Shown in pieces: positions 2,049-56,700 of a stretch of 64,000 bases of DNA. The DNA comes from Diadema antillarum (lineage: Eukaryota), in assembly GCF_040938485.1 (NCBI RefSeq), contig NW_027271368.1, positions 1,240,001 through 1,304,000 on the forward strand, written 5' to 3'. The notes beneath the pieces were generated by a model. The model saw only the letters and a program-made list of their open reading frames with translations, was not told the DNA's origin and did no database searches. The position numbers and the translations under genes were made by a program. The first letter of the stretch is position 1; every line of letters starts with the position of its first letter.

Positions 2049-4350
2049 TCTGCCACTTTAATAGATAATATTTTTTGTAATGTAAACCCTTTTCCTGATT
2101 CTGCTATTATACTTACGGATATATCTGATCATTATGCTATTTATATGTGTTCATCTTTACAGTTAAAGACGAAAATACCTCAGAATTATGAAAGAAGGCG
2201 TAAGTTTACACCTCAGAATATAGCCCAGTTTCAGGAATCTTTGATGGAAATTGACTGGTCTGACTTATATGTGGTGCAAGATACGAATGTAGCTTATGAA
2301 ATTTTTATAAATAAGATTGTTATTTTGTTAGATACACATATTCCATTAGTTAAAAAGAAGTTGGGTAGTTATAAACGTGATCCAAGATTGCCATGGGTGT
2401 CAAAGTCATTATTACGTTCAATTAATCGTAAAAATAATTTGTATTATGTAAGTAAGGCTAAAAAAACACAGCAATCTCGTGATAAGTATACTGCATATAA
2501 AAATACTCTCACTATGGTATTGCGTAAAGAAAAAAGGAATTATTATATGAGAAAATTAGATTTGTTTAAAAATGATATGCGCAATACTTGGAAATTGATA
2601 AATGAAACATTGAATAAGCATAAGGAAAGAAATGTTATTTCTAAAATTAAGAATGATGGATTTGAAATAAAAGATTTACGTATGATAGCAGAAATATTTA
2701 ATTCACATTTTTCAACTGTTGGCCAGAATCTTTGTGCAAATATTCCGTTGTCTACTAAAGAATTTTATGATTATCTGGATGTAGGTAATCAAAATTCAAT
2801 CTTTTTTTCCCCTGTAACAGTATATGAGATTTTAGATATTGTTCATAATTTACCTTCTAAAAGAAGTTCTGGTTATGATGATATTGATAATATACTGTTA
2901 AAAAATATAATACCTTATATTGTTGATCCTTTGTTTCACATTTTTAATCTATCAATATCACAAGGGCAGGTACCAGATGTTATGAAAATATCAAAAATAG
3001 TTCCAATTTTTAAAAAGGGTAATAGGGAAGAATTGAATAATTACAGACCTATTTCTCTTTTGCCTAATATATCTAAAATATTAGAAAAGATAATATATTC
3101 TCGAGTTATAGATTTTTTTAATAGAAATGACATTTTGTCAAAATATCAATTTGGATTTCGCAAGAAACATAGCACAGCACATGCAATATTATCTTTCACT
3201 GAAAAAGTATCTCGAGCAATTGATAAGTTTCAACATACTGCAGGAATCTTCCTGGACCTCTCCAAGGCCTTCGACACGATTAACCACGACATTCTTCTTT
3301 ATAAACTTAATCATTATGGTATACGTGGGAAGGCCTTGGAGTGGTTCAGAAGTTATTTGAAAGACAGAAAACAATTTGTTTGTATAAACAATGAAAAATC
3401 TTCTTTGCGCTCAGTTGATTGTGGAGTTCCACAAGGAAGTATACTAGGGCCGTTACTTTTTATTATCTACATCAATGATTTTCCCAAATCTTCAAATGTT
3501 CTTTCTTTTATATTATTTGCAGATGATTCTAATCTTTTCTTTTCTCATTCAAATCCTCATACATTAGTTGATGTCATGAATATAGAATTGAACAAGATAA
3601 TGCAATGGCTAAGAACAAATAGATTATCGCTTAATTTGCAGAAAACAAATGTGATGTTGTTTAGTAATACCCTTGATAAATTGCCACATGATATAATTTT
3701 TGAAAATGAAGTGATAAAACAGGTTTATTCTGTTAGATTTCTTGGTGTAACTGTAGATAGTAAGCTTTCTTGGAAACAGCATATAGATTGTATATGCCGC
3801 ACTATTTCCAGTAACATAGGTGTAATTAATAAAGTAAAGTTTTGTTTTTCTGTTAAAAAGTTGCTAATGTTATATTCAACGTTAATTTTACCTTATTTAA
3901 CGTATGGAATTATAGTATGGGGAAATACACATTCAACTTACTTGGATAAATTATTATTGTTACAAAAAAAAAGCACTTCGAGTAATATGTAATACCTCCA
4001 AATATTCTCATACTGACGGATTATTTGTGGAGAATAAGGTTTTAAAAGTAAGGGATTTGTATTATTATTACCTTGGTCAATTTATGTACAGTTTGTATAA
4101 TAAGTCACTTCCTTCAGTTTTTGAGAATATGTTTAATAAGAATAAAAATATTCATAAATACCCCACTCGTCAAACAGATGAATATCATTTGCCCCTTACC
4201 CGAACTCTATTTACAAAATCCACGTTTATCTACAGTGGCCCAAAATTTTGGAATTCCCTTGAGAAAAATATAAAAGATTCCATTAGTTTGAAATCATTCT
4301 CTAGTAATTTAAAGAAATATTTGATTAGCTCATATGTACCCCATGATTAG
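2049..4350 (+). pseudogene. LINE ORF2 (APE fragment + reverse transcriptase), one frameshift
   Basis: ORF 2145-3992 has the RT motifs YRPISLL, QFGFR, FLDLSKAFD, GVPQGSILGP and FADD. An A9 run (3964-3972) shifts the frame; removing one A gives LQKKALRVICNTSKYSH..., continuous with ORF 4027-4350 (HKYPTR, YSGPKFWN). Confidence 0.85.
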
Positions 4351-4650: not shown

Positions 4651-5123
4651 CGTATACACTGTACTTCATGTAACCATCCGATTTGATTGAATGAAAACTG
4701 TATACTTTCAATGATTAGCTTGTACGGTACATGTATCGTTGTATTGTGTTATAAAGTCATATATAATTAATGTATTGTAGTAATGTAACGTAAGTGAGGG
4801 GACTGCAATCTACAAGTTCGCTTTTTAGCAGCCCCTCAATTTCCATTTCCATGAAGTTCTTTTAAGAACCAATATGTATTATTATGTTCCAATATATGTA
4901 ATCATGTCAAAGTGTATTACCTGTGTTTGATTGGAAATGAAAATAAAAAAACATGCATGTGAACATGCATGTGTGAAATGAAATGAAATAGAGACCATGA
5001 AGGTCACTGAAATATCACTTTAGGAATCATGTATGAATTAAGGACCCCAGAAATTACTGAAAGTTCATTAAAACATAATTATCATTGAGACTTGAGAGAT
5101 CTGGTATTTTTTACGGTCTTTTG

Positions 5124-5532
5124 TGTGGCAGCAGTCCCCAGGTTGCTGCCATGGCAACAGTTACTCTTCCTGGCGGTATTGTTAGATGCGCGTATTGCCC
5201 TAGAATACGCTAGGCGGTATGCTTTGATTATTGTATGCGCGCAGGCGCTTCCCTTTGATCTTGTAATGGTAACCAAATAGTAGAATGATTTTATACGCTC
5301 AGATCAGTTTCACGTCTGTATAGCTACTACAGAAAACATCGAAGGTACATTCAGCAACGAAATCTTTAAAGGAAAAGGAATAAAAGTCAACGAACCATAA
5401 ACAAGCTGCTTATATTATGTGATATAATGTTCACCAAAGAGTTTCACGGGTACGACCGTTGAGAATAAATATCTGACCGTTTCCAACTACGTCCCGTTTG
5501 TCAACTGGTAATTTATCGCATGGGCAGCTACA
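5124..5532 (+). repeat. 5' LTR of BEL element
   Basis: TGTGGCAGC...GCAGCTACA. Matches 20461-20869 except one T/C site by eye. TATA-like TATATTAT at 5411; AATAAA at 5379 and 5464. Confidence 0.97.
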
Positions 5533-5545
5533 GTGAAACTCTTTG
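5533..5545 (+). promoter_or_regulatory. Primer-binding site, non-tRNA type (complementary to LTR 5435-5447)
   Basis: GTGAAACTCTTTG directly abuts the LTR end and lacks the TGG that pairs with tRNA CCA. Its reverse complement CAAAGAGTTTCAC is present at 5435-5447 and 20772-20784. Confidence 0.75.
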
Positions 5546-6358
5546 AACATCGTTCCTGTTCAACGACAAGTCGATGATCGTCATACCAATCTGATGAGCC
5601 ATTCGATGTCAACCAGCGCATTCGTCCCATCGGCGTTCACCACATCGTAAAGTCGGGTGCAACGCAGGGAATTAGGCAACTGATTGACGGCTTGAATTCG
5701 TGGTAAAGGTCTTCGAACAAGTGTCATCGGAACTGAACTTGAACTTTGAACTTCGATACATGAATGCTGATACTTCCAGTGCTGATATAGACTATAAGAC
5801 AGCTCAGCCCATCATCGATTCCTCATCCGTGACTTCTGTAACAGTCTCCTGGTTGTGGATACATCGTGATCGTGTGGTATTGATATTGTAATCTCGTACA
5901 AGCTGTATTAGATATTAAAGTACAGTTTATTTCGCTCTGTAGGAAGAGAACTAGAGCAAGAAAGGAGTGCGTGACATAAATCATATGTAACTAGACTATA
6001 TAGCTTTGTAAGAACAGTGAATGTGATTGAGCTATATAATTTGAACTAGATATAGAGCTATATATATAGACTTACTCGAATTCAGAAGTAAATATCGCGT
6101 ATTAACTATATCCTTAGTGTTATACACGTGATATACTATCTGGACAGAATGTGATGTGTATTTACTCTTCGTAAAGAAAAATTGTATTCGCTATAGTACA
6201 ATATTTCAAATCTGTGTTACGAAAGAAAACATTTTCTTTCTCTTTGCCTAGAAATGAAGCGAAGGAAGTGAAAATTAGACACTGTTGACATGGTTGATGT
6301 ATAATAACGATCTCATAGAACTGTTGACGTTAATGCAAAGAGTGTGTTATCTGTCAAT

Positions 6359-9300
6359 ATGGAAGAGTATCAAAGTAATACTACCGATGGTCTTGAAGAT
6401 AACGTAAATACAAGCACTAAGAAAGAAACAATCGATAGCATGTCTGCCAAAAATGTGCGGCGTTCTACCCGTACAAAGAAACTTACAGAAAAGGCTAGAC
6501 AGAACAAAGTAGAAGAGTTAGAAGAACAATTCTATTCAGAACATTTTGACATTCTAACAGTCTTGAAGGACTCTGAGAAAATGCTGTCCTCAGTTTCCGT
6601 AAACTGCGATGACCTGTCAGAAAGAAAATCTGACATCTCTGCTAGATTCGGTTCACTGCAACAAGTAGCAGATGAGCTAGAAGAAGTTCTAGGGGAAAGG
6701 GATGAAGAGATAGCTAAGAATTTAGACAAGCTCTCCCCAATTGTTGTTGATATGATTTCGAAAATCGTAACCACTGTTTCTAAGAAGCAATTCGATACTA
6801 AGGAACCATCTATCACAAGGAAGTCGACTGGTTCCAAGATCTCGAAAGCATCTACAATCTCGTCGAAGAGGTTGGTTGTTGCAGCTGAGACTGCAGCTCT
6901 GCAAGAGAAACTTGCTGCACAAAAGCGTCAGAACGAACGTCGGAAGGAGTTAGAGCGTCTTGAGTTGGAAGAAGATGCTCGTAGGAAGGAAGCTTCTTTT
7001 AAGATGGCGCAATTACGCAGAGAACTCGAGGAAGAACGTCTAGAAGGTCAACTGAAGGCACAAGAGGCAATGATGAGAGTGTATGAAGAGGACGATACTG
7101 CATCCTCCATCACAGTGAGATCATCTAAGCAGCTGGTTGGATCATCTCAGAAGGAAAAAAGTGCAACAATCGTGAAAGAAATGTCACGGGAGAAAAGCAT
7201 TCCTAGAGCTGATGATCATCCACTCCCTTCAAACCAGAAGTCGTCGAAGACAGAGGCCCTAAATCCTGAGTCACCAGTCTTCTATCCAGCTTCCTATCGC
7301 TCAGATGCCAAGGAAAGTGATGCTCTTACCGAGGCGCTTGCTCGAGCAATGACGCTTACCAGACTGCCTATTCCTGAGCCTCCTGTATTCATGGGTGATC
7401 CTCTACAGTACCCTGACTGGCTGTCAGCCTTCACAACTTTAATCGAGTGTCGAGGAATCCCAGCTGGTGAAAGAATTCACTACCTCAGAAGATACCTTGG
7501 AGGATCTGCTAGAGATGCTGTCAGTGGCTTCTTCTTGCTGAGGTCAGAGAATGCCTTCGATCAGGCCAAGGCGGTGCTTGAGAAACGCTTTGGTAACCCC
7601 TTCACAATTTCAGAAGCCTTTCGATCTAAACTTGATGCATGGCCAAGAATCGCCAATAAGGACCACAACGGTCTCCAAAATCTCTCAGACTTCCTGCGAC
7701 AATGTCTGGTGGCCTCTTCAGAAATCAAAGACTTGCAGATCTTGAATGACATGCGAGAGATTGGCAAGATTTGCACGAAACTTCCTGACTACATCGTACA
7801 CAGGTGGAATCGCACAGTAGCGACGCTCAAGAAGAGTAGTGGACGATATCCATCCTTTGAAGAATTTGTCTTGTTTCTGACAGAGGAAGCTGACATCGCA
7901 AACGATCCTTACGTGACGTATGAGACTGCAAAGACTGGAAAAGACCGGAACCAACACGTCAGTCAGACACAGGAAGTAAACAAGAAGTCTGCAATTCGGC
8001 AACAAAGGATGACTTATTCGACAGCTAGCAAACCAAATGTGGCCAAGAAAAGCTGCATCTTCTGCGAACGACAGAACCATGGCTTAGAAGAATGCCGGGA
8101 ATTCAGTAGAAAACCAGTGGAGCAGAAAAGAGAGTTTGTGAAGAAGGAAGGACTGTGCTATGGGTGTCTTAGCAAAGGTCATATGTCGAAGCAATGTCCA
8201 AAGAGGAGTGAATGTAAAATATGCAGTAAGCGTCATCCAACCTGTATGCACTACGACACATTCAAACAGTCAACTGCAGAAGGAAAACGAGAAAACAAGG
8301 AAGAACAAGAAACGCAGTCTACCAAGGCCAAGGAGACTCCCAAAGAAAAAGAAGCAAATTGCCACAAAGCCATATCAGGTACAGACGCTTCTCTCACATC
8401 AATGGTTCTGCCGGTATACCTGTCAAGTCTGGACAGTCCCGAGAAAGAGATACTGGTCTACGCTCTGTTAGACACAATGTCAGACACAACCTTCATTGCA
8501 GATAGTGTTGGAGAAGAACTGCAGGTACCATCACATGCTGCTACATTGAGGTTGACAACTATGACAGACAACTGTACGAATATTCCATGTAGGAGATATG
8601 AGAACCTTGTAGTTCGTGGTTTCAAGTCGGCCGAAAAGATACCACTTCCTGCTGCATACTCCAGGAACTCAATTCCACTTGATGAAGCTCACATCCCTAC
8701 ACCAGAGACAGCAATCCAGTGGCCTCACCTAAACTGTCTCGCAGACCAACTCGCACCAAAGCAAGACTGCCCTGTAGGTCTGCTCATTGGATACAATTGT
8801 GCTCGAGCTCTCGCCCCAAAGAACTGTATCTCTGGAAACAATGATGAGCCCTTCGCAGTAGAAACAGAATTAGGATGGAGCATTGTTGGTGGCTCTCAGA
8901 CGTACTCTACAGACAACTTTGATGCATTCGGGCAATCATATCGTACTGTCAGCATGAAGGTAGAAGCTCCTATTTTGACTGACAGTCAATCAGACGTGAA
9001 GTATGTCTACAAGACACAGCTAAAAGATGTCACGACTGCAGACTTCCTTCAGATGATGGAAAAGGACTTTCATGAAGTCGAAGGAACAGATGTAATGTCT
9101 CAGGATGACAAGAAATTTCTGCAGATCGTCAGAGATGGAATCAACCAAAGGGATGATGGATACTATGAAATGCCCCTCCCCTTCAAGAATGGTGAACCCA
9201 CTCTACCGAACAATCGACAAGCTGCCATAAGTCGACTCAAAGGATTGAAGAGTCAGTTCCAGAAACGACCTCAGTACAAAGAACACTACATGACATTCAT

Positions 9301-10946
9301 GAACGAAATTCTTCAGCGAGGTGATGCAGAAAAGGTTCCTGCGGAAGAATTGTCAGTTGAGAACAAGTGGTACATACCACATCATGGGGTATATCACCCA
9401 AAGAAGCCGAACAAAGTGAGAGTCGTTTTCGACTGCAGTGCTCGTTACCAAGGAACCAGTCTAAACGATCATCTCCTACAGGGCCCCGACCTCATCAACC
9501 CTCTGATTGGAGTCCTGTGTAGATTTCGCCAAGGACCCATTGCTTTCACGTGCGATGTGGAAAAGATGTACCATCAGTTCCGCGTCATGAGACAGCATCA
9601 GAACTACCTTCGTTTCTTGTGGTGGGAAGATGGAGATCTTTCCAAGACTCCAGTGGACTATCGAATGAAGGTCCATCTCTTCGGCGCCACTTCCTCCCCA
9701 GGATGTGCCAACTTTGGACTAAAGCAAATCGCGAAGGACCATAAGGAGCTCAGCATGGAAGCTGCTGACTTTCTTACAAGAAACTTCTACGTCGATGACG
9801 GTCTAAAGTGTGAATCTTCTGAAGCAGAAGCCATTGACCTCATTCAGAAGACAGTGAGCATGTGTGCCAAAGGTAACTTGCGTTTGCACAAGTTCGTTAG
9901 CAACAGTCCAGAAGTCACAAGCAGTATCCCTGAGTCTGAACGTGCTGCTGTTGCCAAGACTAGTCTTGAACTCGGCCAGCAAGACGCTACGCCCATTGAA
10001 CGAGCACTCGGCCTACACTGGTGCATCGACTCTGATGAGTTCTGTTTCAGACTTACCCTCAAAGACCGTCCCTTGACAAGACGTGGGATTCTTGCAACAG
10101 TTGCCTCCGTCTACGATCCACTCGGTCTGATTGCACCCTTGGTTCTAGTTGGGAGACAGATTCTCCAGGAGATGTGTAGAAGCAAGATGGACTGGGATCA
10201 TCCTGTTCCTGACGAGCTCCGTCCACGATGGGAAAAGTGGAGACAGGAGATGTTGAAACTCGACAAAGTTAAAATCCCCCGTTGCTTCCAACCACAAGAC
10301 TTTGGAACTCCCAAGGAAGTTGAGCTGCACCACTTCTCAGATGCATCATTGACAGGATATGGTCAGTGTTCCTACGTGCGTCTAAAGAATGAAAGCGGTC
10401 GCGTCCATTGCTCCTTGGTTATGGCAAAGGCACGAGTATGTCCTCTAAAGCCAACAACGATCCCAAGACTAGAACTCCAAGCAGCTACTTGTTCAGTGAA
10501 AATTGCCAATATCCTGGACAATGAACTCGATTATAGTTCTGCCACACACCACTTCTGGACCGACTCACAAGTTGTTCTTGGCTACATACACAATGAGACA
10601 AAGCGCTTCCACATGTACGTTGCCAATCGCGTCGAACGCATCCGTCAGACCTCGCGTCCAGAACAATGGAACTATGTAGCCAGTGCAGAAAATCCTGCAG
10701 ATCATGCATCTAGAGGATTGACGACAGAAGAAATGCTGGCATCAAACTGGCTCACAGGACCCAAGTTTCTTTGGGAGAATGAGATTCCTCCTCAAGACGT
10801 TACTGCAGAAGTCTCTCCAGATGATGTTGAAGTGAAATCTGCCACTGTTCACGCAACACAAGCAAAGACTTTTACGTCCTTCGAAGAAAGGCTGACGCGG
10901 TTCTCCAGCCTTGAAAATGCACTGAAAGCAGTAGCAGTCATAGTAA
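6359..10946 (+). CDS. BEL gag-pol polyprotein, N-terminal part (Gag, protease, RT, RNase H)
   Basis: ORF 6344-10987, first ATG at 6359. Cys/His knuckles (CIFCERQNH, CYGCLSKGHMSKQC, CKICSKRHPTCMH), protease YALLDTMSDTTFI, RT WYIPHHGV/VRVVFDCSA/FYVDD, and RNase H HHFSDAS, IPRLEL, WTDSQVVL, NPADHASRG. The last residues (TQVEIPIETSRNQ) are read-through into the inserted TIR. Confidence 0.95.
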
Positions 10947-11464
10947 CCCAGGTCGAAATTCCCATAGAAACCAGTAGAAACCAGTAGAGACCTTCTACTG
11001 GTTTCTAATGGTTTCCGGATTTGAGTGGTTTCTATGGGAATTTCCAGAGGGTTCCAGTAGGACTCCCATAGAGACCATTAGATTCAACTGGTCAAAAGAC
11101 CAGAACAAACCAATAAAAACCAGTAGAGTCTACTGGTTTTCAAATGGAGTGTTAAATTCAAAGTTAGACCAGTAGAATCCAGAAGAAATCAGTACTGTTT
11201 AATGGTTTCAAGTGGAGAGGGAAACCTGTAGAGAACAGTACAAACCAGAAGAGTCGACTGGTTTCAAAACTGGGTTGAAAAAAGACAAGTCAGACCAGTA
11301 GAAACCAATACAAACCAGCATTTTTTTTTATGCATGTTAAGACATTACTTGTTAACCAGTAAAAACCAACAGGTACCCGTGCAGCCTACTGGTTTGAAGA
11401 TGGCTTTAAAAGAAGGGAAAACCAGTATGAACCAGTACAGACCAGTCACTTTTCTGCATGTATA

Positions 11465-13190
11465 AACAAGAATTAAATCAAACCAGTAGAAACCAACAGG
11501 TACCAGTAGTAATGGCTGGAAGAGGGTCATACAATTGTGATGAAGTAATACCAGCATAAACCAATAGAAACCAGAATATTCTACTGGCTTAAAATGGGGG
11601 TGTCGAAATATCAAGTCAAACCAGTGGTAACCAGTACAAACCAGTCAATCTCCTGTACATGTAGAAACAAATAAGTCAAACCAGTAGAAACCAACAGGTA
11701 CCTGTAGAAGTCTACTGGTTTGAAGAGGGTTGTAGAAGTGTGAAGTTATACCAGTAGAAACCGACAAAAACCAGTAGAATCCACTGGCTTTAAAGTGGGG
11801 TGTCAAAATATCAAGTGAAACCAGCGGAAACCAGTACAAACCAGTCAATCTCCTATACATGTAAAACAAATAAGTCAAACCAGTAGAAACCAACAGGTAC
11901 CTGTAGATAGTCTACTGGTTTGAAGAGGGTTGTAGAAGTGTGAAGTTATACCAGTAGAAACCGACAGAAACCAGTAGATTCCACTGGCTTGAAATGGGGT
12001 GTCAAAATATTAAGTCAAACCAGTGGTAACCAGTACAAACCAGTCAATCTCCTATACATAGAAAAACAAATAAGTCAAACCAGTAGAAACCAACAGGTAC
12101 CTGTAGATAGTCTACTGGTTTGAAGAGGGTTGTAGAAGTGTGAAGTTATACCAGTAGAAACCGACAGAAACCAGTAGTTTCCACTGGCTTGAAATGGGGT
12201 GTCAAAATATTAAGTCAAACCAGTGGTAACCAGTACAAACCAGTCAATCTCCTATGCATGTAAAACAAATAAGTCAAACCAGTAGAAACCAACAGGTACC
12301 TGTAGATAGTCTACTGGTTTGAAGAGGGTTGTAGAAGTGTGAAGTTATACCAGTAGAAACCGACAGAAACCAGTAGATTCCACTGGCTTGAAATGGGTGT
12401 CAAAATATTAAGTCAAACCAGTGGTAACCAGTACAAACCAGTCAATCTCCTATACATGGAAAAACAAATAAGTCAAACCAGTAGAAACCAGCAGGTACCT
12501 GTAGATAGTCTACTGGTTTGAAGAGGGTTGTAGAAGTGTGAAGTTATACCAGTAGAAACCGACAGAAACCAGTAGTTTCCACTGGTTTGAAATGGGGTGT
12601 CAAAATATTAAGTCAAACCAGTGGTAACCAGTACAAACCAGTCAATCTCCTATACATGGAAAATCAAATAACCAGTAGAAACCAACAGGTACTGTAGATA
12701 GTCTACTGGTAAGAAAAGGATTAGTAGAAGTGTGAAGTTATACCAGTAGAAAGTGACAGAAACCAGTAGATTCCACTAGCTTAAAATGGGGTGTCGAAAT
12801 ATCATGTCAAACCAGTGGTAACCAGTACAAACCAGTCATCTCCTATACATGTAAAAGCAAACAAGTCAAACCAGTAGAAACCAACAGGTACCTGTAGATA
12901 GTCTACTGGTTTGAAGAGGGTTGTAGAAGTGTGGAGTTATACCAGTAGAAACCGACAGAAACCAGTAGATTCCACTGGCTTGAAATGGGATGTAAAAATA
13001 TCAAGTCAAACCAGCGGAAACCAACGAGTACCTGTGGAGTCTACCGGTTTGAAGAGGGTTGTAAACTTGTGAAGTAATACTAGTAGAAACCGACAGAAAT
13101 CAGTAGATTCTACTGGTTTAAAATGGGGTGTCAAAATACTTCTAACAAGTCAAACCAGTAGAAACCAACCGAGTGCCTGCAGAAACCAAT
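11465..13190 (+). repeat. Tandem array, ~199-200-bp unit, ~8-9 copies (left subterminal arm)
   Basis: The CAGGTAC marker occurs at 11695, 11894, 12094, 12293, 12492, 12686 and 12885 (spacings 199, 200, 199, 199, 194, 199); copies at both edges are degenerate. Confidence 0.95.
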
Positions 13191-13419
13191 AGAAACCGGT
13201 GGATTCTACTGGAAGTTGTCAAACAACAGAACGTCGTTACAATGAACAACTTTTACGGAAAATTTTGTTAATTTTGTTATCATGTGGATATTAACAATTG
13301 CAAAAAAAAAATAAAAATATAAGTCATATATTTTGAAATAAAATTATACTTATGTAATTGTTATAACCTAATTGTCTTTAAACTCGTTATGCTCATCAAT
13401 AAATCCCTGGGTCTCAAAC

Positions 13420-13545
13420 GGCAACATGACGTCATACTACCGCGTAGCTAGCCGTTATGCAAACGAGCTACTTTTGGCGGGCAGCGCAATCCGCCGTCCG
13501 CTCCCCAGCCCTGCGCTGGCTGGCTGGCCGGCCGGCCGCCACCGC
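13420..13545 (+). promoter_or_regulatory. CpG-rich promoter-like segment inside the nested element
   Basis: CRE palindrome TGACGTCA (13427-13434) and E2F-type TTTGGCGGG (13473-13481) lie in a GC/CpG-rich island within AT-rich DNA. Confidence 0.4.
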
Positions 13546-14310
13546 ATTCATATTTGAGCTGTACGTCGGTACTGCGCTGTCGTACACACATCAACGCACC
13601 CATCGCAATCTGTTCAACTCTGTCATCCAGCAGCCAATTATACCGAGAAAACTCCACTTACGATTGCATTTGTGTTTCGGAATGAGAATCTTCAATGAGC
13701 TCAGGAATCTAAGGTTTAGTTAGCGGTAAACATTGACGTTTTATTTCATTTGAGAGTGACTTTGATGTCGAGTTTGCTTCCAGGCCGTATTCAACCATAG
13801 CTGATCATACTAGGTGACGATCGGAATCGAAGCCGTACGTTTGAACGCTACGTTTTTTTCGGTGTACTAGTACGCCCTACGGTATGTTTCAGAAATGTCG
13901 TACACCATACTACATGTATGTTCAAACGATTTGAAATGTGCAAGCTAGTGACATCGTGAAAATTGGCGAAACAATCCACTGTGAATCCAAACTGTATCTG
14001 GTACTACCGTTGTGGTGGTGGTACGTGTCGGAGACTGACAATGCCCGATAATGGACTGTGAGACACTGGAACAGCTACAGCCACCAGTACGCAGTAGGTT
14101 CACTGATATGCATAGCCATGCTGTACTCGTCTGCAGTGCAAGTGTATGAGGAACCCGACTGAGACAAACCGAGCACCAGTGTTGGCCAGTTAGTGAGTGT
14201 TTTGCCTTAGACCTCTTGTTAGCCTAGATTTAAAGTATTATTAACGCTAACTACAAAGTTGGATTTAAGTTAGCTCTTTATCACTCAATATCAGTTTGTG
14301 TGCCATGATG

Positions 14311-14457
14311 GAAACATTCTGTTTGCCACATTAGACACCAACAAAATAGTGATGATTTGAGAATACATGTACATTCAGTTTTTCTCATCTAACCGAAACA
14401 TTCTGTTTGCCACATTAGACACCAACAAAATAGTGATGATTTGAGAATACATGTACA
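14311..14457 (+). repeat. Direct duplication of ~63 bp (spacing 84 bp)
   Basis: GAAACATTCTGTTTGCCACATTAGACACCAACAAAATAGTGATGATTTGAGAATACATGTACA occurs twice. Confidence 0.85.
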
Positions 14458-15098
14458 GCTATGTATTTAACTTGTAGATTTATGTTGAATTGTATTTTGG
14501 ACATGCAGTGAGCAAAGTTGTAGAAAAAAATGCCAAGCTTTGCTTTCATGTGTGTGTGTAAATTGTATGACAAATCTGTGACCATTTAAGCGTACAAAAA
14601 GCCAGTATATTATAACAACAGTTCGTAGGGAACACCGCTTGCTAGTCAATCACCAAGTAAAATACAGGCTATACAGTATGTACCGGTTACCCGGTACATT
14701 GTAAGTGAGAGAAATGGAATTGCCAGAAACACTGTCTACCCTGTGCTAGTGATTTATCAATCGGTGGGGGCGGGTTTGTGCATTGAGCAGAATATGTGAA
14801 GTTAACTATAACACGCCCTTGACAGAGTCAGGTGTGGAAACGTAACATATGTTGTACATTAATCATACATGTATGTATAAAGAGTTCAAACTGAAACACT
14901 AGTTGACCATAATGATATGATTGTTGAATGTTGATCTCCAATGAAGAAGAAAAATGTGCTGATTTTTTAAACAAATGTTCTCAATTTGGCAAAATTTACG
15001 TACAACGTGTAGTACAATATATCACTTTAACATCAAACATTGAAAATTGATTGATTACTCAAAGTTCTCTTTCTGTTTGTTTTATCTTTAAGTATTAG

Positions 15099-16313
15099 GA
15101 GACGATGAAGACTAGAGGAAGCCAGCTAAGATCGACTTGCGGAGCTCCGCTATGCCACGTACCTGGTATTTTGACTGCCACGAGTGGGCCCTACATCTTC
15201 CCTTGCCTTCTTCAGAGAATGATGACCTCACTGAGAGTTTGGGCCTTCAGCATTTTGAAATCGTCATACAAGCACCAGATGGGCCCAACCAGGGAGGCCT
15301 GGCCAAATATTTGCCCTTACAAAAAGTGTATGTTGTCAGCTTGTCATTTCAGGAAAATTTCAAGATATTTTCACTCTAGTGAAAGAATTATGTGAGCGAA
15401 AGAAATGTAAAACTGAGAGAACCATCATATTCAGCCAGACTCATCATCATCAGTGCAGAGATTTGTTAGCGACAATGTACTTTAAAGATTGACTGGAGGA
15501 AAAGGAGTGTCACTATGTCCTGTGTTATTCCATCACTGGTGACAGCTTAAATGAGGAAATACTTGAACAGTACCGTAATGTACAATGTACAAGTTTAGTA
15601 CATACATGTATGTCAGAACCAGATGACTGGGCTTGGGTGATCTTCTGTGCTACAGTGTATCTTTACGTTCATGATGGGTACAAGTATAAACTGCAAGAAA
15701 GTCAGCATATACTTAGTTCATGTACAGTATTTTATCATTTTGCACAAGAGAGTTGCTGTGCTGGTCGAGGAGGGGAAGATTCCTGCGCTGTACTGATGGC
15801 AAAGGATTAGGTGAGGACTAACTTGGACAATAACACAGTATAGCTGTACTTGCTATCGGATAAAAAGACTAACGGGTGTGAGCTTGAAGTGCAAAACCTG
15901 CCGCGTCCATGCTGTGTTGTTTGTGCTCAAAGTTGTGTAATTGAATCATGCAACGGTGTACATTGTATTTTTTTCTTTTTTATTTTAAATGGTCAAATGG
16001 GTAATGTTCAGTTTGATGCATTTTCTTTCTTTTTTTTTAAATTAAATTAGTGTAACCTTGCAACTTGCAGACCTGCCGGTTTGCAAATGATAATGATTTT
16101 ATCAGGTCCCAGGTGAAGACTCTTGACTTATTGTGAAAAATCTATGACTACTATTAGACATTAGACCTCACAGATTGTGCATACCACTTTCCAGCTGACA
16201 GAACAAGGACCTATTATAGAAAGAAACTAGCCCAACCAAATGCTGTGTGCAGCAAAGGGACAGGGCTGTGTATAATTACAATATAGTAAGAAAGGTGATA
16301 TGCACTCAAACAG
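15099..16313 (+). pseudogene. Decayed exon-like coding segments of unknown identity inside the nested element
   Basis: Higher-GC blocks with AG/GT boundaries and stop-interrupted frames (e.g. ORF 15137-15379; LTDCAYHFPADRTRTYYRKKL near 16170-16240). Possibly remnants of an accessory or captured gene; no family recognised with confidence. Confidence 0.25.
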
Positions 16314-17689
16314 GTAATTAAAGGTGAATCGTGGTATTTAGGTCCTTGACATGAGGTTCTCTTATGTTTTTGAAAGGCTGTTAACTAACATAAAATGAGC
16401 TGCCAAGCATGCGTGAGCATTTTGGTAATTGAAATCTATTCTGTAAACTTACATTCAGATGTGACTATGAATTTGTTTATTTGTTTATTTTCCTCTTCTT
16501 TTTTTTTTTACTCATTGCCTCTTACCTACAATATCCAATCCCATTTTGGTGCCGCTTTTTTTAACTCTATCTATGATCGATGCTGTTAGTGTTATCTGTG
16601 TATGTACCGTAGATGTATGTACCTGGATGATGCCAGCAAGACAGCATGGTTTATTTTACATACATAATTATGAATATCTATTCTTTGCCAACCACCAATG
16701 CTGTATTTTGTTTTGTCAAGTGAAGTTTTGTTTGTCATGCCATCAGTTTAATATCTTTATTATTAAGTTTGTTTGTGTACGTATGAGTTTTGCATCCTTT
16801 CAGATGAACATTTTCTATGATTAGGGTAATCATCTTTAAGTTATCGCTTTAACAAACAAATGGGGCATATGGAAAGTGCTCAATGACAGGAATGTAAACC
16901 TTGTATTTTTGATGTAATACAAATTTACATGTTTTTTTTTTTCAAATACCTGTCGAGGCCTTATTTGTCTTTCAAAAACAAAAATTCCTGTCACATAATC
17001 AGTTGAACGAATTTGTTAACTGAAATAAAAATTCTTTGGCTTGGCAAAACAACATGGTGAAAAAAAAAGTAATCTGAATAATGAATACTTTGAAATGTAA
17101 TGTACTCATGTAATATGATTATCATCCATTGACCTGTAATAAAATTTCCTCAACTTAAGACTGTATTTACTCCAGACTTACAGTGTGTGATAGAAGTCTC
17201 ATGTTTTGATTAATGTATGCATACAAATGCAGTGTGAATTTGTGTGGCATGTGTTGTGTACATGTATGCATTCTTAATTTTGAACATTCAGGTGTGTCTC
17301 ATTCAGTCGAAAATTGGTTAGTACTGTACATTAGTTGATGTCTGGTGGCACCATTACAAATAGGTTTTTTGTTTGTTTGTTAGTTTTTTGCTGATTTGAA
17401 GAAGAATTTGTACTACTAGTGCACATCCATTATATTGGACATGGTTCTATGGAAACTTTTTTGCAATGTATCAAAAAAGTAAAAAATCAGGTCCTTAAAT
17501 TACCTGTATTTACAACTGTACTACATTTACAATGTTCTTTCTTGCATTGTTGAGCTGTAACAACATTTTAATGTAACAAAAAGAAAACTGTCGGTCCTGA
17601 AGATGTCGTCATAATGGGAGTCACTTGAAGTGCAAGTTCTTCTTCCAAATGCATTGGTACATGCTGTTACTGGTTCAGTAGGAATTTCT

Positions 17690-18620
17690 TCTGGTTTCTA
17701 CTGGGGCCAGTACAACATCTACTGGTATTCTGTTGGTTTCTTCTGGTTTCAGTAAGGAATCTACTGGCATTCTTCTGGTTCCAGTAGAAATTCCTACTGG
17801 TTTCTACTGGTTCCAGTAAGAAATCCTGCTGGTTTCTACTGGTTCCAGTAAGAAATCCTGCTGGTTTCTACTGGTTCCAGAAGAAATCCTGCTGGTTTCT
17901 ACTGGTTCCAGTAAGAAATCCTGCTGGTTTCTACTGGTTCCAGTAGGAAATCATGCTGGTTTCTACTGGTTCCAGTAAGAAATTCAGCTGGTTTCTACTG
18001 GTTCCAGAAAGAAATCCTGCTGGTTTCTACTGGTTCCAGTAAGAAATCATGCTGGTTTCTACTGGTTCCAGTAAGAAATCCTGCTGGTTTCTACTGGTTC
18101 CAGTAAGAAATCCTGCTGGTTTCTACTGGTTCCAGTAAGAAATCCTGCTGGTTTCTACTGGTTCCAGTAAGAAATCCTGCTGGTTTCTACTGGTTTTCTA
18201 CTGGTTTTGTTAAGATTTCTACTGGTTTTGTTAAGATTTCTACTGGTTTTGTTGAGATTTCTACTGGTTCCAGTAAGAAATCATGCTGGTTTCTACTGGT
18301 TTTGTTGAGATTTCTACTGGTTTTGTTGAGATTTCTACTGGTTCCAGTAAAAAAATCCTGCTGGTTTCTACTGGTTTTCTACTGGTTTTGTTAAGATTTC
18401 TACTGGTTTTGTTGAGATTTCTACTGGTTTTGTTGAGATTTCTACTGGTTTTGTTGAGATTTCTACTGGTTTTGTTGAGATTTCTACTGGTTCCAGTAAA
18501 AAAATCCTGCTGGTTTCTACTGGTTTTCTACTGGTTTTGTTAAGATTTCTACTGGTTTTGTTGAGATTTCTACTGGTTTCATTGAGAGTTTTCATTGGTC
18601 TTCAGTGGATTCTACTGGTT
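17690..18620 (+). repeat. Right subterminal arrays: 32-bp unit then 21-bp unit
   Basis: TTTCTACTGGTTCCAGTAAGAAATCCTGCTGG (32 bp, ~17790-18190) and TTTCTACTGGTTTTGTTGAGA (21 bp, ~18190-18580, interspersed with 32-bp units). Confidence 0.93.
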
Positions 18621-18838
18621 TAAATCAAGCATTTCTACTGGTTTCTACTGGTTCCAATAAGAATTCTTACTGGTCTGCTACTGGTTCCAGTACAAATTTC
18701 CTACTGGTTTTCTACTGGTTTTATTTCACTTTCCATATTGAAACCAGTAGAAAATCGGTCTCCACTGAACCCGTACAAACCAGTAGAATTCTACTGGTTT
18801 TAGCTCTACTGGTTTCTATGGGAATTTCGACCTGGGAA

Positions 18839-20286
18839 AGTGCTCTTACAGGAAAAGGGGTCTGAGCATTGACAAAGTCGAAGCCAAACAAGTAGCAGAG
18901 AGGAATCTCATCTGCGCAATCCAGAAGGAAGCCTTTCGTGAAGAAAGAAAGCAACTCGACAAATCAGATTCCCTAGCCACTTCGAAGTCCAACTCACTGA
19001 GACAGCTTGACCCGTTCCTAGATGACCACGATCTGCTACGGGTGGGAGGTCGGTTGAAGAAGGCAGAAATGATGTATGGTGAAAAACATCCTGTCATCCT
19101 ACCAAAGGATAGCCACCTCTCTAAACTTGTCGCCTTACACTACCATCGAAGAACGGCACATCAAGGAAGGAATCTAACCATCAATGCTATTCGCTCTGGT
19201 GGTTATTGGATCACTGGTTGCAGACGCATTGTCTCTTCTCTTATCAGCAAGTGTGTTCACTGCATCAGATTCCGAGGCAAGCCAAGAGGACAGATGAAAG
19301 CCAATCTACCACAAGACAGAGTAGAACCTTCACCTCCTTTCACATACTGTGGACTCGACTGTTTTGGTCCCTTCACCATCAAGGAAGGGAGAAAGGAGTT
19401 GAAGCGATATGGACTCATTCTTACCTGCATGTCAATGAGGGCTGTACACATAGAAGTGCTAGATGACATGTCTACTGACGGATTCCTCAATAGTTTGAGA
19501 TGTTTCATTGCAATCCGAGGAAACGTTCGCCTCATTCGTTGTGACCAAGGATCAAATTTCATGGGTGCAAAGCACGAACTAAACAAGGGCCTTTCTGAAC
19601 TGGATGAAAATCAAATAGCTACCCAGTTACTGAAGATCAACTGTGAGTTCAGGATGAACCCGCCGGCTTCGAGCCACATGGGAGGAGTCTGGGAGCGGCA
19701 AATCAGGAATGTCAGGAACGTCCTGAATGGTATACTTGATCCGTCGGGCACTCTACTCTCAACTTCTTCTCTGCGAACGTTCCTGTATGAAGCGATGGCA
19801 ATCATCAACAGTAGACCTCTGACCGTCGAAGATCTGGAGTGTCCAGATGGTCCACTCCCATTGACTCCCAATCATGTCCTGACAATGAAATCAGGTCTCG
19901 TATTACCCCCTCCAGGACAATTCGTGAAAGAAGATCTCTATCTCCGAAAGAGGTGGAGGCGTGTCCAATACTTAGTCAACCTCTTTTGGGCACGCTGGAA
20001 GAAAGAGTATCTTCACACCCTACAAGCAAGAAAGACTTCGTCACAGCCACAGCCAAACATTGAAGCAAACGACATTGTCATCTTGCAAAACGAGAGTCTC
20101 TGCAGAACGGACTGGAGAATTGCCAAGGTCATTGAGACCATCTCCAGTGATGATGGTTTGGTTCGAAGAGCGACTCTCCTCATGGCAACTCCAGATCTAG
20201 ACGAGCAAGGCAAACCACTCCACAAAAGAAGTGTAATCGAACGACCTGTTCACAAACTGATCGTTCTCATCAAAAGCTCAGAATAG
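18839..20286 (+). CDS. BEL pol C-terminal part (integrase)
   Basis: Open from 18839 in the same frame as ORF 19042-20286: KCSYRKRGLS...IQKEAF...LDPFLDDHDLLRVGGRL, zinc motif HYH..AHQG..CVHC, DDE core GLDCFGP/RCDQGSNF/GGVWER, C-terminal ERPVHKL. Confidence 0.95.
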
Positions 20287-20460
20287 TTACTGACTATGTT
20301 ATATTTTTTGAAGGTTTTCACAGTACTTTGCTGTGGCATATTGATTATTATTGTGATATACTTCGCTATTGGTTTGGTATCAAACCTTTGTTTACACAAA
20401 ATTAAATGTATAATAAAGTGATTAATGTGAAATAAAATCATAGATGATTTTGGGTGGGAG

Positions 20461-20869
20461 TGTGGCAGCAGTCCCCAGGTTGCTGCCATGGCAACAGTTA
20501 CTCTCCCTGGCGGTATTGTTAGATGCGCGTATTGCCCTAGAATACGCTAGGCGGTATGCTTTGATTATTGTATGCGCGCAGGCGCTTCCCTTTGATCTTG
20601 TAATGGTAACCAAATAGTAGAATGATTTTATACGCTCAGATCAGTTTCACGTCTGTATAGCTACTACAGAAAACATCGAAGGTACATTCAGCAACGAAAT
20701 CTTTAAAGGAAAAGGAATAAAAGTCAACGAACCATAAACAAGCTGCTTATATTATGTGATATAATGTTCACCAAAGAGTTTCACGGGTACGACCGTTGAG
20801 AATAAATATCTGACCGTTTCCAACTACGTCCCGTTTGTCAACTGGTAATTTATCGCATGGGCAGCTACA
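20461..20869 (+). repeat. 3' LTR of BEL element
   Basis: 409 bp, preceded by the PPT and followed by the TSD CTTTTG. Confidence 0.97.
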
Positions 20870-21385
20870 CTTTTGTGATCTTGAAGGTCTTGCCCTGTAC
20901 TTAAATTAGCATTGCTTAGTACTAGTCCAAATGTGCTTGTGAGATGGCGGTCGTTATACAATGTACAGGCCTACAGTCTCGAGCCCAGGGGCCGCAGAAT
21001 GGTTCAAAGTGTAGGGACTTCGACTGTTATGTATGATAGTAGCACCGTCCACCGGGTTTGGGCACGGATCAATTCCCCCCTACCCTCCCACTCCCCTTCA
21101 AAGAATCTTAGCGTTCCACAGCCCCTGTATTGTGTGGGACCTAGATGGCGCACTTTTTGGTTGTGATCAAGGATTCGCGCTCTCACGCACGCAAGGACTT
21201 GCGACAAAAGTTTTTTTTTTTTCCAATGTTGCTGACGTCAGAGATAATTAAAATACATAATAAAAATTATTATAATTTAATTTGTCGATGATAGGCTTCG
21301 CGCGTTTTGATGTCCGGTTATTACACATATAATGCCAGAGTAATCAAATAAGTTTTTATAATTAGCTTTTGTTTTATTTATGATT

Positions 21386-53700: not shown

Positions 53701-56700
53701 GTCAACATTTTCAGGACACCACTCAGATCTGAAGAGCACAGGGAATGCTTCAGTGCAAAACCCATCACTGCCAATTTCCCCACAAAAGTCAAGTCCATTT
53801 TTAGCTAATGTGTCTCTTGAACAAATAGAACAGCTTGTAAATGCTAAAAAACGGGAGTACCAAACAAGTGTTAAAATGAGGCAGGAAAGTGAACTAGATT
53901 TTGATGAACCGAGAGAGAAAAAGAAGCCTGGAAGTTTTCTACCCTCAGATGTTGAGAAAGATGCAGTGTCCACCTATTCTGAACCTCTATGGACAGAAAA
54001 GCCCAAAGAAAAAGACAGAGAGCATGATGATGATGATGAGAAGGATGTTTGTGAAAAGAGAGATGATGATGACATGGAAGTTTCTTTTAAAGACGAACCT
54101 CAAAACTTTGAAATTGAAGGAATAGCTGCCCAAAGTGACGTCGTAGAGTGTGAAGATTTGCAGACAAGTGCAGGTTTCCTTGATGAGGAGGAACATTTGC
54201 CGGAGGTGGAAAGTAAAAGCTTTGAAGCAGTGAAAGAAGAGGGAGAATGGCCAGCCCTTGAAGTAGCTAAGGAACTAAATGAAGCCAAAGAAAAGAAGGA
54301 GAAGGAAGAGGCTGCCATCCAATATGATGAAACCACAGGCATAGAGGTGAATCTCTTTGCCAGAATGAAGGCTGACCCTTCTTCTCTCACCAGCAAGGAC
54401 AGGGACCTCATCCAGAAGCAGATGATGAAGCACTTGGAGAGGAAAGCTGCTCCTCCAGAGAGCAAGGAGCCAAAGGTAGAGTTTGATCCCGATAAGAAAC
54501 TGTTGCCATACCAACACGAATTGGCAGCACCGGGATTGATGGGCTTTAACTACATCATGTGTGCCCCTGTTGGAACGGGAAAGGCGCTTACAGCAGCTGC
54601 CATATGCAATCACCAGAGGAAAATTGCTATCGCAAAGAATGAAGAAAAACCTTACAAGTCTTTGTTCGTTTCGAGTGGGCAGTCTGTCAGTGACCGCCAC
54701 AGGGATGCATTTCAGAATATTTTCCCTCCGGGAGCAGTGTTTGTCCTTGAAAGCCCATCCCAGTTCAAGGAAGTCTTTGACCTGCCCAGCGTTCACGTCG
54801 TGATGTTGACAGCTGAGCAGCTTAGCCAAGTCCTGAAGGAAAGACAGATAGCTTTCATTGATTTGACCACTGTGGTCATTGATGAATGTCATCTGATTGC
54901 TACCAAGCATCCCTTCAATGACATCACCAAGTACTACCTGGCTGAGAAGAAGGACTTGCTGGCGAGGAAGGCTCCCCGAGGGGCATGGACTCTGGGAAGA
55001 CCATATGGTGGAATTTCTTTCATCATAGGTAATTTCATCATGTATGATTTTTCTTTTTGAGTGTCTGTACTTTTAGTTTAAAAATGTTCTCTCTATAGCA
55101 CCCATTTATGTGTCACATACTTAAGCGAGCCTACATGTACAGATGAGCAAAAACCCAGCTTTAATGCCTCAATATTGTTGTTAAACGTTAGGGATGAAAA
55201 TAACCGACATCAAAACATTAATCAGTAAAATCAATGTTAACTGTAAAATTTGAACTATGATAATTAGTAAATCCATTTCTAGAATTAGCATCTTCAGTTA
55301 TGTTTTATCAAGAAAATTGGTGATTTCTCCTTCCATTTGCGGCTTTATTGCAAATTTGTATGTTTTGTTAGGATGTTATACAATTTGTAAGTGAACTATA
55401 CATCTACATCAAATGTGATAATTCTAACATTTTTTTTGTAATCACTGCTACCAATGATAAATAATGGCTTTAATACAATTTCTGTGGAGCTTTCAGAGGA
55501 GGTACCCATACATGGAGTATCGAATGTTAGGACTGAACTTCACTCAGATACTATGTCTCATCTTGTGACAAAATTCATGTGGAAAATGGGGTTGGGTTTA
55601 GGTTGATAAGGATTTTAAAAAATGCCTTCCACCCTTGAAAAATCCTGGGTGATTTCTCCTTTTTTTCTTTTCTTTGTGTGGTACTGATTAACACTGCCAA
55701 AAAATTTATTGTTGAAAAAAAAGAATTTTTCTATCCTAAGATACTAGAAACATTGCCTTGAGTAACTTTTAACACATTAAGCCCAATTATGTTTAGATAT
55801 CCCTAAAGATTATTGGCAGCATTGTGAAGGCAATAGACCGAGAATACAAAATCTGTCCTGTTCAATCTTGCTAGGCCTGACACCAAACCTGGGGGCAAAC
55901 TTGCAGTGCTTCACCCGTGAGTTCATGGTCCGGCAGTGCGGTCTCCTGGACAGCAAGGGAATCCGGCGTGTGGAGTCCGTGGACAACCTGCGAGAGATGC
56001 TGAAGGTCAACAAACCACCAGAAGTGGACACTATGCTACTCACGTCACGTGCCCAGTCTACCATCAACAGTGTCTTCAGGTAAGTATATCAACATTTGTT
56101 AGTTTTTTTTTTTTTTTTGGGGGGGGAGGGGAAGGGTTTTTGGTACCAGGGTATGGATTGCTGATGATTATACTAGGTGAGAGGGGTAATATGCATTTTA
56201 TATGAATGGTCTATACACTGTCAGATTCCTTGTGCAAAGACACTTTGGCCCACATTCACGAAGGTGGTACAAATGAAACCATGGTTTAAACCGGCCCATG
56301 GACAAAAACCATGGAGCGCCAAGTGTCGCAAGGAATATTTCGTTACGAAATTGGTCATTTCGTCAACAAAATAACCGTTTTGTTACGAAATCAGTCATTT
56401 CATGGACGAAATGTTCATTTAGTTACAAAATGTTGTCATTTCATTCCAAAATAATAATTTCATCGACGAAATGACTGATTTCGTAACGAAATATTCCAGG
56501 TGACACTTGACGCTCCATGGTTTAAACTATAGTTTCATTTGTGCCACCTTCATGAATTCGGGCCATAGAGAGAAGTTGTTATGGGAGTTACATGTATAGA
56601 TCAGCTGTGCCATGCATTTTAATCAAAACTTACATTTTATTCCGTGGAGATTATGTGGCTACCCAAATATTTGAAGTCATGTCAATACAACTTAACTCAT

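What the first reader, a model, noticed from the sequence alone, without database searches (positions are those of the whole stretch)
5435..5545. BEL/Pao retrotransposon with Tf1-like self-priming geometry instead of a tRNA PBS
Seen: the 13 nt immediately after the 5' LTR (GTGAAACTCTTTG, 5533-5545) lack the TGG needed to pair with tRNA CCA, but are the exact reverse complement of CAAAGAGTTTCAC at 5435-5447 inside the LTR. Pairing extends 5-6 bp further across a 3-nt bulge (ATGTTC/GAACAT). The duplex ends exactly at the LTR boundary, so the 3' end of the LTR segment would be extended from the LTR's terminal base. The segment lies ~25 nt after a TATA-like box (5411) and before AATAAA (5464), where the transcript 5' end is expected. 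The chance of a given 13-mer in 409 nt is about 6e-6 at uniform base composition. Established: in Tf1/sushi-type Ty3/gypsy elements the first ~11 nt of the mRNA anneal to the PBS and are cleaved to act as primer. Inference: a BEL/Pao lineage uses the same tRNA-independent priming. I do not know whether this is already reported for this clade.
Basis: partly seen in the sequence, partly recalled or inferred. Interest (0 to 1): 0.85.

Follow-up and report, generated by a model that had tools for sequence, protein, structure and literature searches.

The report
Spliced self-primer in BEL/Pao retrotransposons
A sea-urchin BEL/Pao retrotransposon has no tRNA primer site; the site next to its LTR instead matches a piece of its own LTR that in most copies is contiguous only after an intron inside the LTR is spliced out, and relatives in other sea urchins, a starfish, a snail and a fish keep this match through compensating changes.

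Summary
CAAAGAGTTTCAC (5435-5447, repeated at 20772-20784 in the 3' LTR) is the exact reverse complement of the 13 nt that follow the 5' LTR (5533-5545). A second 5-bp helix lies across a 3-nt bulge.

The main new finding is that the window copy is a processed form. At least 12 other full-length copies in this genome (a Diadema sea urchin) carry a ~340-nt GT..AG intron in both LTRs, exactly between CAAAGAG and TTTCAC. The primer-like segment therefore spans an exon-exon junction.

Related BEL/Pao elements have the same layout: an LTR intron (or an intron-less LTR) and a PBS starting at the first base after the LTR that complements the spliced junction. I found this in Lytechinus, S. purpuratus, Patiria, Littorina, a goby and three unnamed-host contigs (46-78% protein identity for the searched relatives). 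The pairing covaries: all four Watson-Crick pairs occur at one position, and T-runs of 3, 4 and 5 are matched by A-runs.

No tRNA-type PBS and no host match were found. Best reading: tRNA-independent self-priming by a spliced element RNA. TSS, cleavage and priming itself are untested because no RNA data were usable. Other first-stage notes of this scan flag similar BEL elements elsewhere in this genome; I did not check them.

The parts
5118..5123 (+). Target-site duplication CTTTTG, 5' copy (3' copy at 20870-20875)
   Evidence: Alignment of the two LTRs with their flanks.
5124..5532 (+). 5' LTR, 409 nt, TGT..ACA, intron-less (processed) form
   Evidence: Other copies have a 751-nt LTR carrying a ~340-nt intron.
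5427..5447 (+). Primer-like segment: helix-2 arm ATGTT 5427-5431, bulge CAC 5432-5434, helix-1 arm CAAAGAG|TTTCAC 5435-5447. The exon-exon junction lies between 5441 and 5442.
5448..5532 (+). Predicted template of an 85-nt minus-strand strong-stop DNA. It would run from the putative cleavage site to the LTR end and contains AATAAA at 5464-5469.
   Evidence: Geometry; inference only, not observed.
5533..5550 (+). Primer-binding site GTGAAACTCTTTG (helix 1) plus AACAT (helix 2). It starts at the first base after the LTR and has no TGG.
   Evidence: The 18-mer occurs exactly only at the PBS of 12 copies of this family in the genome.
6344..10946 (+). gag-pol open frame (DUF1759 gag, Pao peptidase A17 region). 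It is cut at 10946/10947 by an inserted element; the frame then runs on to a stop at 10987.
10947..18836 (.). 7.9-kb foreign insertion with perfect 32-bp terminal inverted repeats and internal tandem repeats. It is not part of the retrotransposon.
   Evidence: no Pfam hits on its ORFs.
18837..20451 (+). Remainder of pol, with the integrase open frame at 19042-20286 (Integrase_H2C2, rve, DUF5641)
20452..20460 (+). Polypurine tract GGGTGGGAG abutting the 3' LTR
   Evidence: sequence directly upstream of the 3' LTR; function inferred.
20461..20869 (+). 3' LTR, intron-less, with its copy of the primer-like segment at 20764-20784

Best explanation
This is a recently inserted BEL/Pao LTR retrotransposon of a Diadema sea urchin. 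It belongs to a widespread BEL/Pao lineage that probably starts reverse transcription without a tRNA.

The sequence that abuts the 5' LTR (the PBS) base-pairs with a segment of the element's own LTR RNA. In the standard element that segment is made of the last 3-7 nt of a short LTR exon and the first 6-8 nt of the next exon, separated by a 212-701-nt spliceosomal-type intron that lies wholly inside the LTR. Only spliced RNA carries the contiguous complement.

Proposed steps, all inferred:
1. A spliced element RNA anneals to the PBS. This is most simply the 5' leader of the genomic RNA itself, or possibly a co-packaged spliced RNA acting in trans.
2. The RNA is cut after the last paired base (...UUUCAC / GGG), as RNase H does in Tf1.
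3. The new 3' end is extended through U5. This gives an ~85-nt strong-stop DNA that defines the LTR end.
4. After strand transfer, everything upstream of the cut is copied from the 3' LTR. Progeny keep the intron if that copy was unspliced and lose it in both LTRs if it was spliced. The window copy is such an intron-less product.
For: Shown here:
- The duplex is exact, starts at the first base after the LTR and is beyond chance.
- At least 12 full-length copies carry a ~340-nt GT..AG insert in both LTRs exactly between CAAAGAG and TTTCAC, with an identical PBS. The insert occurs nowhere else in the genome except in related LTRs.
- The intron was lost precisely at least twice. Old intron-less solo LTRs group with old intron-containing ones, and the window LTR pair nests among young intron-containing copies.
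- The same architecture appears in Lytechinus variegatus, a metagenome scaffold, S. purpuratus, Littorina saxatilis, Patiria miniata, a goby and contigs of sample ERZ25767047. The pairing is always in register with the LTR end.
- The pairing covaries. Exon-1 position -4 is A-T, C-G, G-C or T-A. Position -3 is G-C or A-T. Position 3 from the cut is C-G, T-A or G-C. Exon-2 T-runs of 3, 4 and 5 are matched by PBS A-runs.
- The intron's own last bases do not fit the PBS beyond its final AG.
- PBSs that vary in step with each family's own LTR argue against a conserved host tRNA primer. No Rfam family, no tRNA in the window and no tRNA-like match to the 18-mer in the genome were found.

Established knowledge: Tf1/sushi elements self-prime (as summarised in PMC6317226).
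Against: - There is no RNA evidence. The runs that hold the sequence are contigs of unknown kind. They show the intron-less join, but that join also exists as DNA in this genome.
- The TSS is unknown. AT-rich TATA-like motifs lie only about 20-40 nt upstream of the 5' splice site in several families. If these are the promoters, exon 1 would be very short or absent from 5' LTR transcripts.
- In several families only 3-5 nt of exon 1 pair.
- Covariation cannot tell spliced pairing from an unspliced three-way junction.
- Cleavage and priming have not been observed.
- One relative (L083) does not fit the scheme cleanly.
- The literature check covers only open-access text.
Confidence: 0.62

Rival explanations
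1. Self-priming occurs without splicing. In unspliced genomic RNA the PBS bridges the two exon ends, with exon 2's start on its 5' half and exon 1's end on its 3' half, and the intron is looped out as a three-way junction. Cleavage after TTTCAC then gives the primer.
For: Covariation supports pairing of both exon ends with the PBS but does not require that they be joined. Almost all copies keep the intron in both LTRs, which is simplest if unspliced RNA is what gets replicated.
Against: The 3' helix would be only 6-8 bp, closed by a 212-701-nt loop. Intron boundaries have canonical GT, polypyrimidine and AG signals in every family. Precise intron loss recurs, so the intron is in fact spliced. 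Intron-less families keep the same PBS logic (L085 and the window copy).
Confidence: 0.17
2. The pairing is real but is not the primer. It would be a long-range leader-LTR structure serving packaging, dimerisation, control of LTR splicing or suppression of the 5' poly(A) site. Reverse transcription would be primed by something else, such as a tRNA fragment not recognised here.
For: Retroviruses have functional U5-leader helices around the PBS (own knowledge). The AATAAA lies 17-30 nt downstream of the pairing segment. No priming product was observed.
Against: In all 10 elements tabulated the duplex begins at the first nucleotide after the LTR, which is the position fixed by the primer's 3' end. 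There is no TGG and no other candidate PBS next to the LTR. No host sequence matches the PBS.
Confidence: 0.12
3. The complementarity is chance, or a non-functional by-product of aberrant reverse transcription such as a snap-back copy fixed in one family.
For: Aberrant palindromic LTR-PBS-inverted-LTR copies exist in this genome. This shows that the repeat does cause template-switch artefacts.
Against: 0 of 1992 controls reached 13 nt. The feature is conserved with compensatory changes across echinoderms, a mollusc and a fish, in elements whose proteins are 46-78% identical to the window's.
Confidence: 0.03

Closest known systems
Tf1/sushi-group self-priming (Ty3/gypsy chromoviruses)
   Same: No tRNA PBS. 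The PBS abuts the 5' LTR and is complementary (10-14 nt) to the element's own LTR-derived RNA about 85-240 nt upstream. The implied cut falls at the end of the duplex and the strong-stop DNA is short.
   Different: The superfamily differs (BEL/Pao). In Tf1 the complement is the first 11 nt of the mRNA. Here it spans an exon-exon junction of an intron inside the LTR, so the RNA 5' end must lie further upstream and splicing is needed to make it contiguous. TSS and cleavage are untested.
Predicted self-priming in plant Tcn1 (Ty3/gypsy) and TAR (Ty1/copia) lineages (PMC6317226)
   Same: Self-priming is inferred from PBS-LTR complementarity, and self-priming has arisen in more than one superfamily.
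   Different: These are plant lineages. No LTR intron is reported, and nothing is reported for BEL/Pao.
Canonical Belpaoviridae priming (ICTV profile, PMC8742986)
   Same: Same gene content and LTR/PPT layout.
   Different: [quoted passage not shown] This lineage has no such site.
Retroviruses with a splice donor inside R (deltaretroviruses, foamy viruses; own knowledge)
   Same: Splicing signals lie inside the LTR.
   Different: Their introns end far outside the LTR and have no known role in making the primer.
Internal tRNA-fragment priming (copia, Ty5, plant half-tRNA PBS; PMC6317226)
   Same: The PBS lacks the TGG of a tRNA 3' end.
   Different: Those PBSs match conserved host tRNA segments. 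Here the PBS varies with each family's own LTR.

Membership tests
BEL/Pao (Belpaoviridae, Semotivirus) | Pol with the Pao-type peptidase A17 / RT region | tested here: met
   PF05380, E = 3.5e-49.
BEL/Pao (Belpaoviridae, Semotivirus) | Gag of the DUF1759 type and integrase with a DUF5641 C-terminal domain | tested here: met
   PF03564 E = 2.6e-10; PF18701 E = 2.4e-22; Integrase_H2C2 and rve are weak. Homologues carry the same set.
BEL/Pao (Belpaoviridae, Semotivirus) | LTRs with TGT..ACA ends and a short target-site duplication | tested here: met
   (CTTTTG). 5-bp duplications are seen in other copies and species.
BEL/Pao (Belpaoviridae, Semotivirus) | 18-nt PBS complementary to the 3' end of host tRNA-Arg or tRNA-Gly (ICTV description) | tested here: not met
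   No TGG after the LTR. The 18-mer complement is found only in the element's own copies. No tRNA or Rfam match. The full host tRNA set could not be scanned.
Tf1/sushi-type self-priming mechanism | PBS adjacent to the 5' LTR and complementary to the element's own LTR RNA | tested here: met
Tf1/sushi-type self-priming mechanism | The complementary bases are the very first nucleotides of the transcript | not testable with these tools
   No RNA reads were available. The LTR intron makes an exact Tf1 geometry unlikely for standard copies.
Tf1/sushi-type self-priming mechanism | RNase H cut at the end of the duplex releases the primer; the cDNA starts opposite the last LTR base | not testable with these tools
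   Needs cDNA intermediates. Only the register of the duplex with the LTR end is shown.
Tf1/sushi-type self-priming mechanism | Element belongs to the Ty3/gypsy chromovirus clade | tested here: not met
   The domains are BEL/Pao. The resemblance is therefore in mechanism, not in family.

The most novel reading that the evidence does not exclude
A major metazoan BEL/Pao lineage makes its reverse-transcription primer by spliceosomal removal of an intron that lies entirely within the LTR. Only RNA that has been spliced can pair with the PBS, so initiation of reverse transcription is licensed by splicing. The intron is re-inherited from the unspliced 3' LTR copy.
Probability: 0.5. Interest if true: 0.92.

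Novelty: new variant of a known kind. Interest (0 to 1): 0.85.

Why it matters
If this holds, three things follow.

First, the textbook and ICTV statement that Belpaoviridae are tRNA-primed is wrong for a lineage found in echinoderms, molluscs and fish.

Second, a primer assembled across a splice junction would be a new way to start reverse transcription. It would link retroelement replication to the host spliceosome. I found no report of either point in the open-access library.

Third, there are practical consequences. LTR annotation pipelines that look for tRNA-type PBSs will mislabel these elements. The two LTR length classes (with and without intron) are processing variants of one family, not separate families.

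The system is directly testable with 5' RACE or long-read RNA and with cDNA intermediates in sea urchin material.

Tried and rejected
- **RNA evidence.** Both sequencing-run searches gave only Logan contigs of unknown or DNA kind. Read laying on the intron-containing LTR showed the GT..AG join in two runs. The same join exists as DNA in this genome, and contigs show no transcript ends. This is inconclusive for splicing and for the TSS.
- **Host primer.**
  - The reverse complement of the 18-nt PBS is exact only in the element's own copies.
  - The 1-mismatch hits I fetched lie in GC-rich coding-like repeats or in unrelated sequence.
  - ARAGORN finds no tRNA in the window and Rfam gives no match on 5000-6400.
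  - A full host tRNA set could not be scanned.
- **Other BEL/Pao families of the same genome.** Many exist at 46-59% protein identity.
- **Diverged LTR relatives in the genome** (88% and 66% identity) are solo LTRs, so they have no PBS to compare.
- **Loci without an LTR pair.** Contigs L080, L081 and L089 (Priapulus) showed no LTR pair and no convincing signature.
- **The 1-mismatch match at 54347-54359** lies in coding-like sequence and is chance.
- **TATA-like motifs** were compared by eye between families and gave no consistent TSS prediction.

Full report
**What is in the window.**
- Two 409-nt direct repeats (5124-5532 and 20461-20869) differ at one base, end TGT..ACA and are flanked by CTTTTG on both sides.
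- Between them lie an open frame with DUF1759 (gag) and Pao peptidase A17 (6344-10987) and an integrase frame with Integrase_H2C2, rve and DUF5641 (19042-20286). This is a BEL/Pao LTR retrotransposon.
- Its interior is 7.9 kb longer than in other copies. A foreign element with perfect 32-bp terminal inverted repeats sits in pol at 10947-18836.
- The best protein match (98%) is to Diadema setosum, so the host is a diadematid sea urchin.

**The observation.**
- CAAAGAGTTTCAC occurs at 5435-5447 and 20772-20784. Its reverse complement occupies 5533-5545, beginning at the first base after the 5' LTR.
- ATGTT (5427-5431) pairs with AACAT (5546-5550) across a CAC bulge.
- None of 1992 control 20-mers from the element's interior had a complement of 13 nt or more in the LTR.
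- The RNA fold joins the two segments.
- There is no TGG after the LTR.

**The unexpected part.**
- A search of the whole assembly with 5380-5700 showed that most copies match in two pieces about 340 nt apart.
- Reading one of them (L002) shows ...CAAAGAG|GTAAGC...(~340 nt, AT-rich)...TTTCTTTACAG|TTTCACGGG.... This is a canonical GT, polypyrimidine and AG intron placed exactly inside the 13-mer.
- At least 12 full-length copies carry it in both LTRs and have the same PBS.
- The intron sequence occurs nowhere else in the genome except in related LTRs.
- Only the window copy and two others (on contigs C70 and C95) among the young copies lack it, as does a pair of old solo LTRs.
- In an LTR tree the old intron-less LTRs group with the old intron-containing ones, and the window pair nests among young intron-containing copies.
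- The intron has therefore been removed precisely at least twice. The simple explanation is splicing followed by retrotransposition.

**Relatives elsewhere.** A protein search found relatives at 78% identity and lower. I fetched their loci and located their LTR pairs. In the list below, each PBS starts directly after the LTR's terminal ...CA.

| Element | LTR exon junction and intron | PBS |
|---|---|---|
| Lytechinus variegatus | CGAG\|TTTCAT, 402-nt intron | GTGAAACTCG |
| Metagenome scaffold L088 | CGAG\|TTTCAC, 701-nt intron | GTGAAACTCG |
| S. purpuratus | CGAG\|TTTTCAC, 526-nt intron | GTGAAAACTCG |
| Littorina saxatilis | CGAG\|TTTTAC, 648-nt intron | GTAAAACTCG |
| Contig L084 | AAG\|TTTTTCAC, 584-nt intron | GTGAAAAACTT |
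| Patiria miniata | AGGAG\|TTTTCAC, 242-nt intron | GTGAAAACTCCT |
| Goby (Mugilogobius) | TGAG\|TTCTGAC, 212-nt intron | GTCAGAACTCA |
| Contig L085 (intron-less) | contiguous CAAAGAGTTTTCAC | GTGAAAACTCTTTG |

**Covariation.**
- In all ten tabulated elements the duplex is in register with the LTR end.
- Exon-1 position -4 shows A-T, C-G, G-C and T-A.
- Position -3 shows G-C and A-T.
- Position 3 from the cut shows C-G, T-A and G-C.
- The T-run of exon 2 (3, 4 or 5) is matched by the A-run of the PBS.
- The last bases of the intron do not fit the PBS beyond the shared AG. The partner of the PBS 3' half is therefore exon 1.
- Individually the 10-11-nt split matches are only modestly rare (5-36 of 1992 controls). 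Their homologous position and the compensatory changes together make chance untenable.

**Against a host primer.**
- The PBS changes in step with each family's own LTR, which a conserved tRNA would not allow.
- The 18-nt complement occurs exactly only in the element's own copies, and the near matches I fetched are unrelated repeats or sequence.
- No tRNA gene lies in the window and no Rfam family matches.
- The ICTV profile states that Belpaoviridae have a PBS for tRNA-Arg or tRNA-Gly and are tRNA-primed.
- The two large BEL/Pao surveys in the library do not discuss priming at all.
- No paper in the library combines BEL/Pao with self-priming. Self-priming is described for Tf1/sushi and predicted for plant Tcn1 and TAR.

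**Mechanism (inferred).**
- A spliced element RNA pairs with the PBS. It is then cut after the last paired base and extended through U5, giving an 83-237-nt strong-stop DNA depending on the family.
- After strand transfer, the LTR part upstream of the cut is copied from the 3' LTR region of the template.
- Progeny keep the intron when that 3' copy is unspliced and lose it from both LTRs when it is spliced. This accounts for the mixture of copies seen.
- Only 3-7 nt of the main helix lie in exon 1, so the transcript must start well upstream of the duplex for the intron to be spliced. The strict Tf1 picture (primer = first bases of the mRNA; TSS about 5426-5436) is therefore unlikely for standard copies.
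- I could not locate the TSS. Available runs are contigs of unknown kind. Their GT..AG join also exists as DNA in this genome, so it proves nothing about RNA.
- A three-way junction in unspliced RNA, or a non-priming structural role, remains possible.

**By-products seen in the genome.**
- One full-length copy (L013) has GTG inserted in its PBS. This makes it a perfect 21-nt complement of the spliced segment.
- Another locus (L017) is a complete LTR, the PBS and then the reverse complement of exon 1 and U3 back to LTR position 1, flanked by a 5-bp duplication.
- C95 and C574 carry similar inverted junctions.
- These fit one of two processes. Either plus-strand DNA copies a spliced primer, or the strong-stop DNA's PBS end snaps back onto the complementary LTR segment. 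I cannot tell these apart.
- Either way, the two segments do meet during reverse transcription.

- Other first-stage notes of this scan report similar 'self-priming BEL' signatures, and an LTR exon, on other pieces of this genome. I did not test them and they are not counted as evidence.

Noticed in passing
window 10947-18836: A 7.9-kb non-coding insertion in pol has perfect 32-bp terminal inverted repeats (CCCAGGTCGAAATTCC...), subterminal AAACCAGTAGA motifs and internal tandem arrays (periods of about 199, 32 and 21 nt). It is probably a non-autonomous DNA transposon. No clear target duplication was seen, and its ORFs have no Pfam hits.
   Followed up: partly
L013 (G000 C316), about 1590-1615 on the reverse strand: A full-length copy with intron-containing LTRs has the PBS GTGAAACTCTTTG-GTG-AACAT. 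The 3-nt bulge is filled in, giving a perfect 21-nt complement of the spliced LTR segment.
   Followed up: partly
L017 (G000 C1728) 848-1913: A palindromic insertion consists of a complete LTR with intron, the PBS, and then the reverse complement of exon 1 plus U3 back to LTR position 1. It is flanked by a TTGGG duplication. It is either a fossil of primer copying or a snap-back of plus-strand strong-stop DNA.
   Followed up: partly
L036 (G000 C95) 1052-2935; L035 (G000 C574) 1124-1471: These are aberrant copies. In L036 the LTR is cut exactly after ...CAAAGAGTTTCAC and joined to 19 nt of reverse-complemented U5, then to integrase sequence and a normal intron-less 3' LTR, with a CCAAG duplication. 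C574 has several such inverted LTR pieces.
   Followed up: partly
L083 (ENA ERZ25767047 ctg38221) 3240-4189 and 11219-12022: This related element's 5' LTR carries a ~155-nt palindromic rearrangement that is absent from its 3' LTR. Its PBS (AGTAGAAACACA) matches a contiguous 12-mer in the LTR that is directly followed by GTAACC. A second TTTCTAC sits behind a CCAG acceptor about 92 nt from the LTR end. It does not fit the simple scheme.
   Followed up: partly
L078 (Lytechinus) about 4125-4145 and 4250-4260: The intron's 3' end (TTCAATGT) is complementary to the leader just downstream of the PBS (ACATTGAA). This gives the unspliced RNA an alternative duplex of similar predicted energy. It is not seen in Diadema and may be chance.
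   Followed up: no
L002 700-870 (flank of a Diadema copy): The flank is an extremely abundant short repeat. Summed contig depth is about 2 million in two runs, with A-rich loose ends, so it looks SINE-like.
   Followed up: no
window about 5405-5409, and homologous LTR positions in L034, L037, L079, L088: By eye, a (G)CTGC motif is conserved about 31-37 nt upstream of the LTR 5' splice site in several families. It could mark the promoter or TSS region. This was not computed.
   Followed up: no
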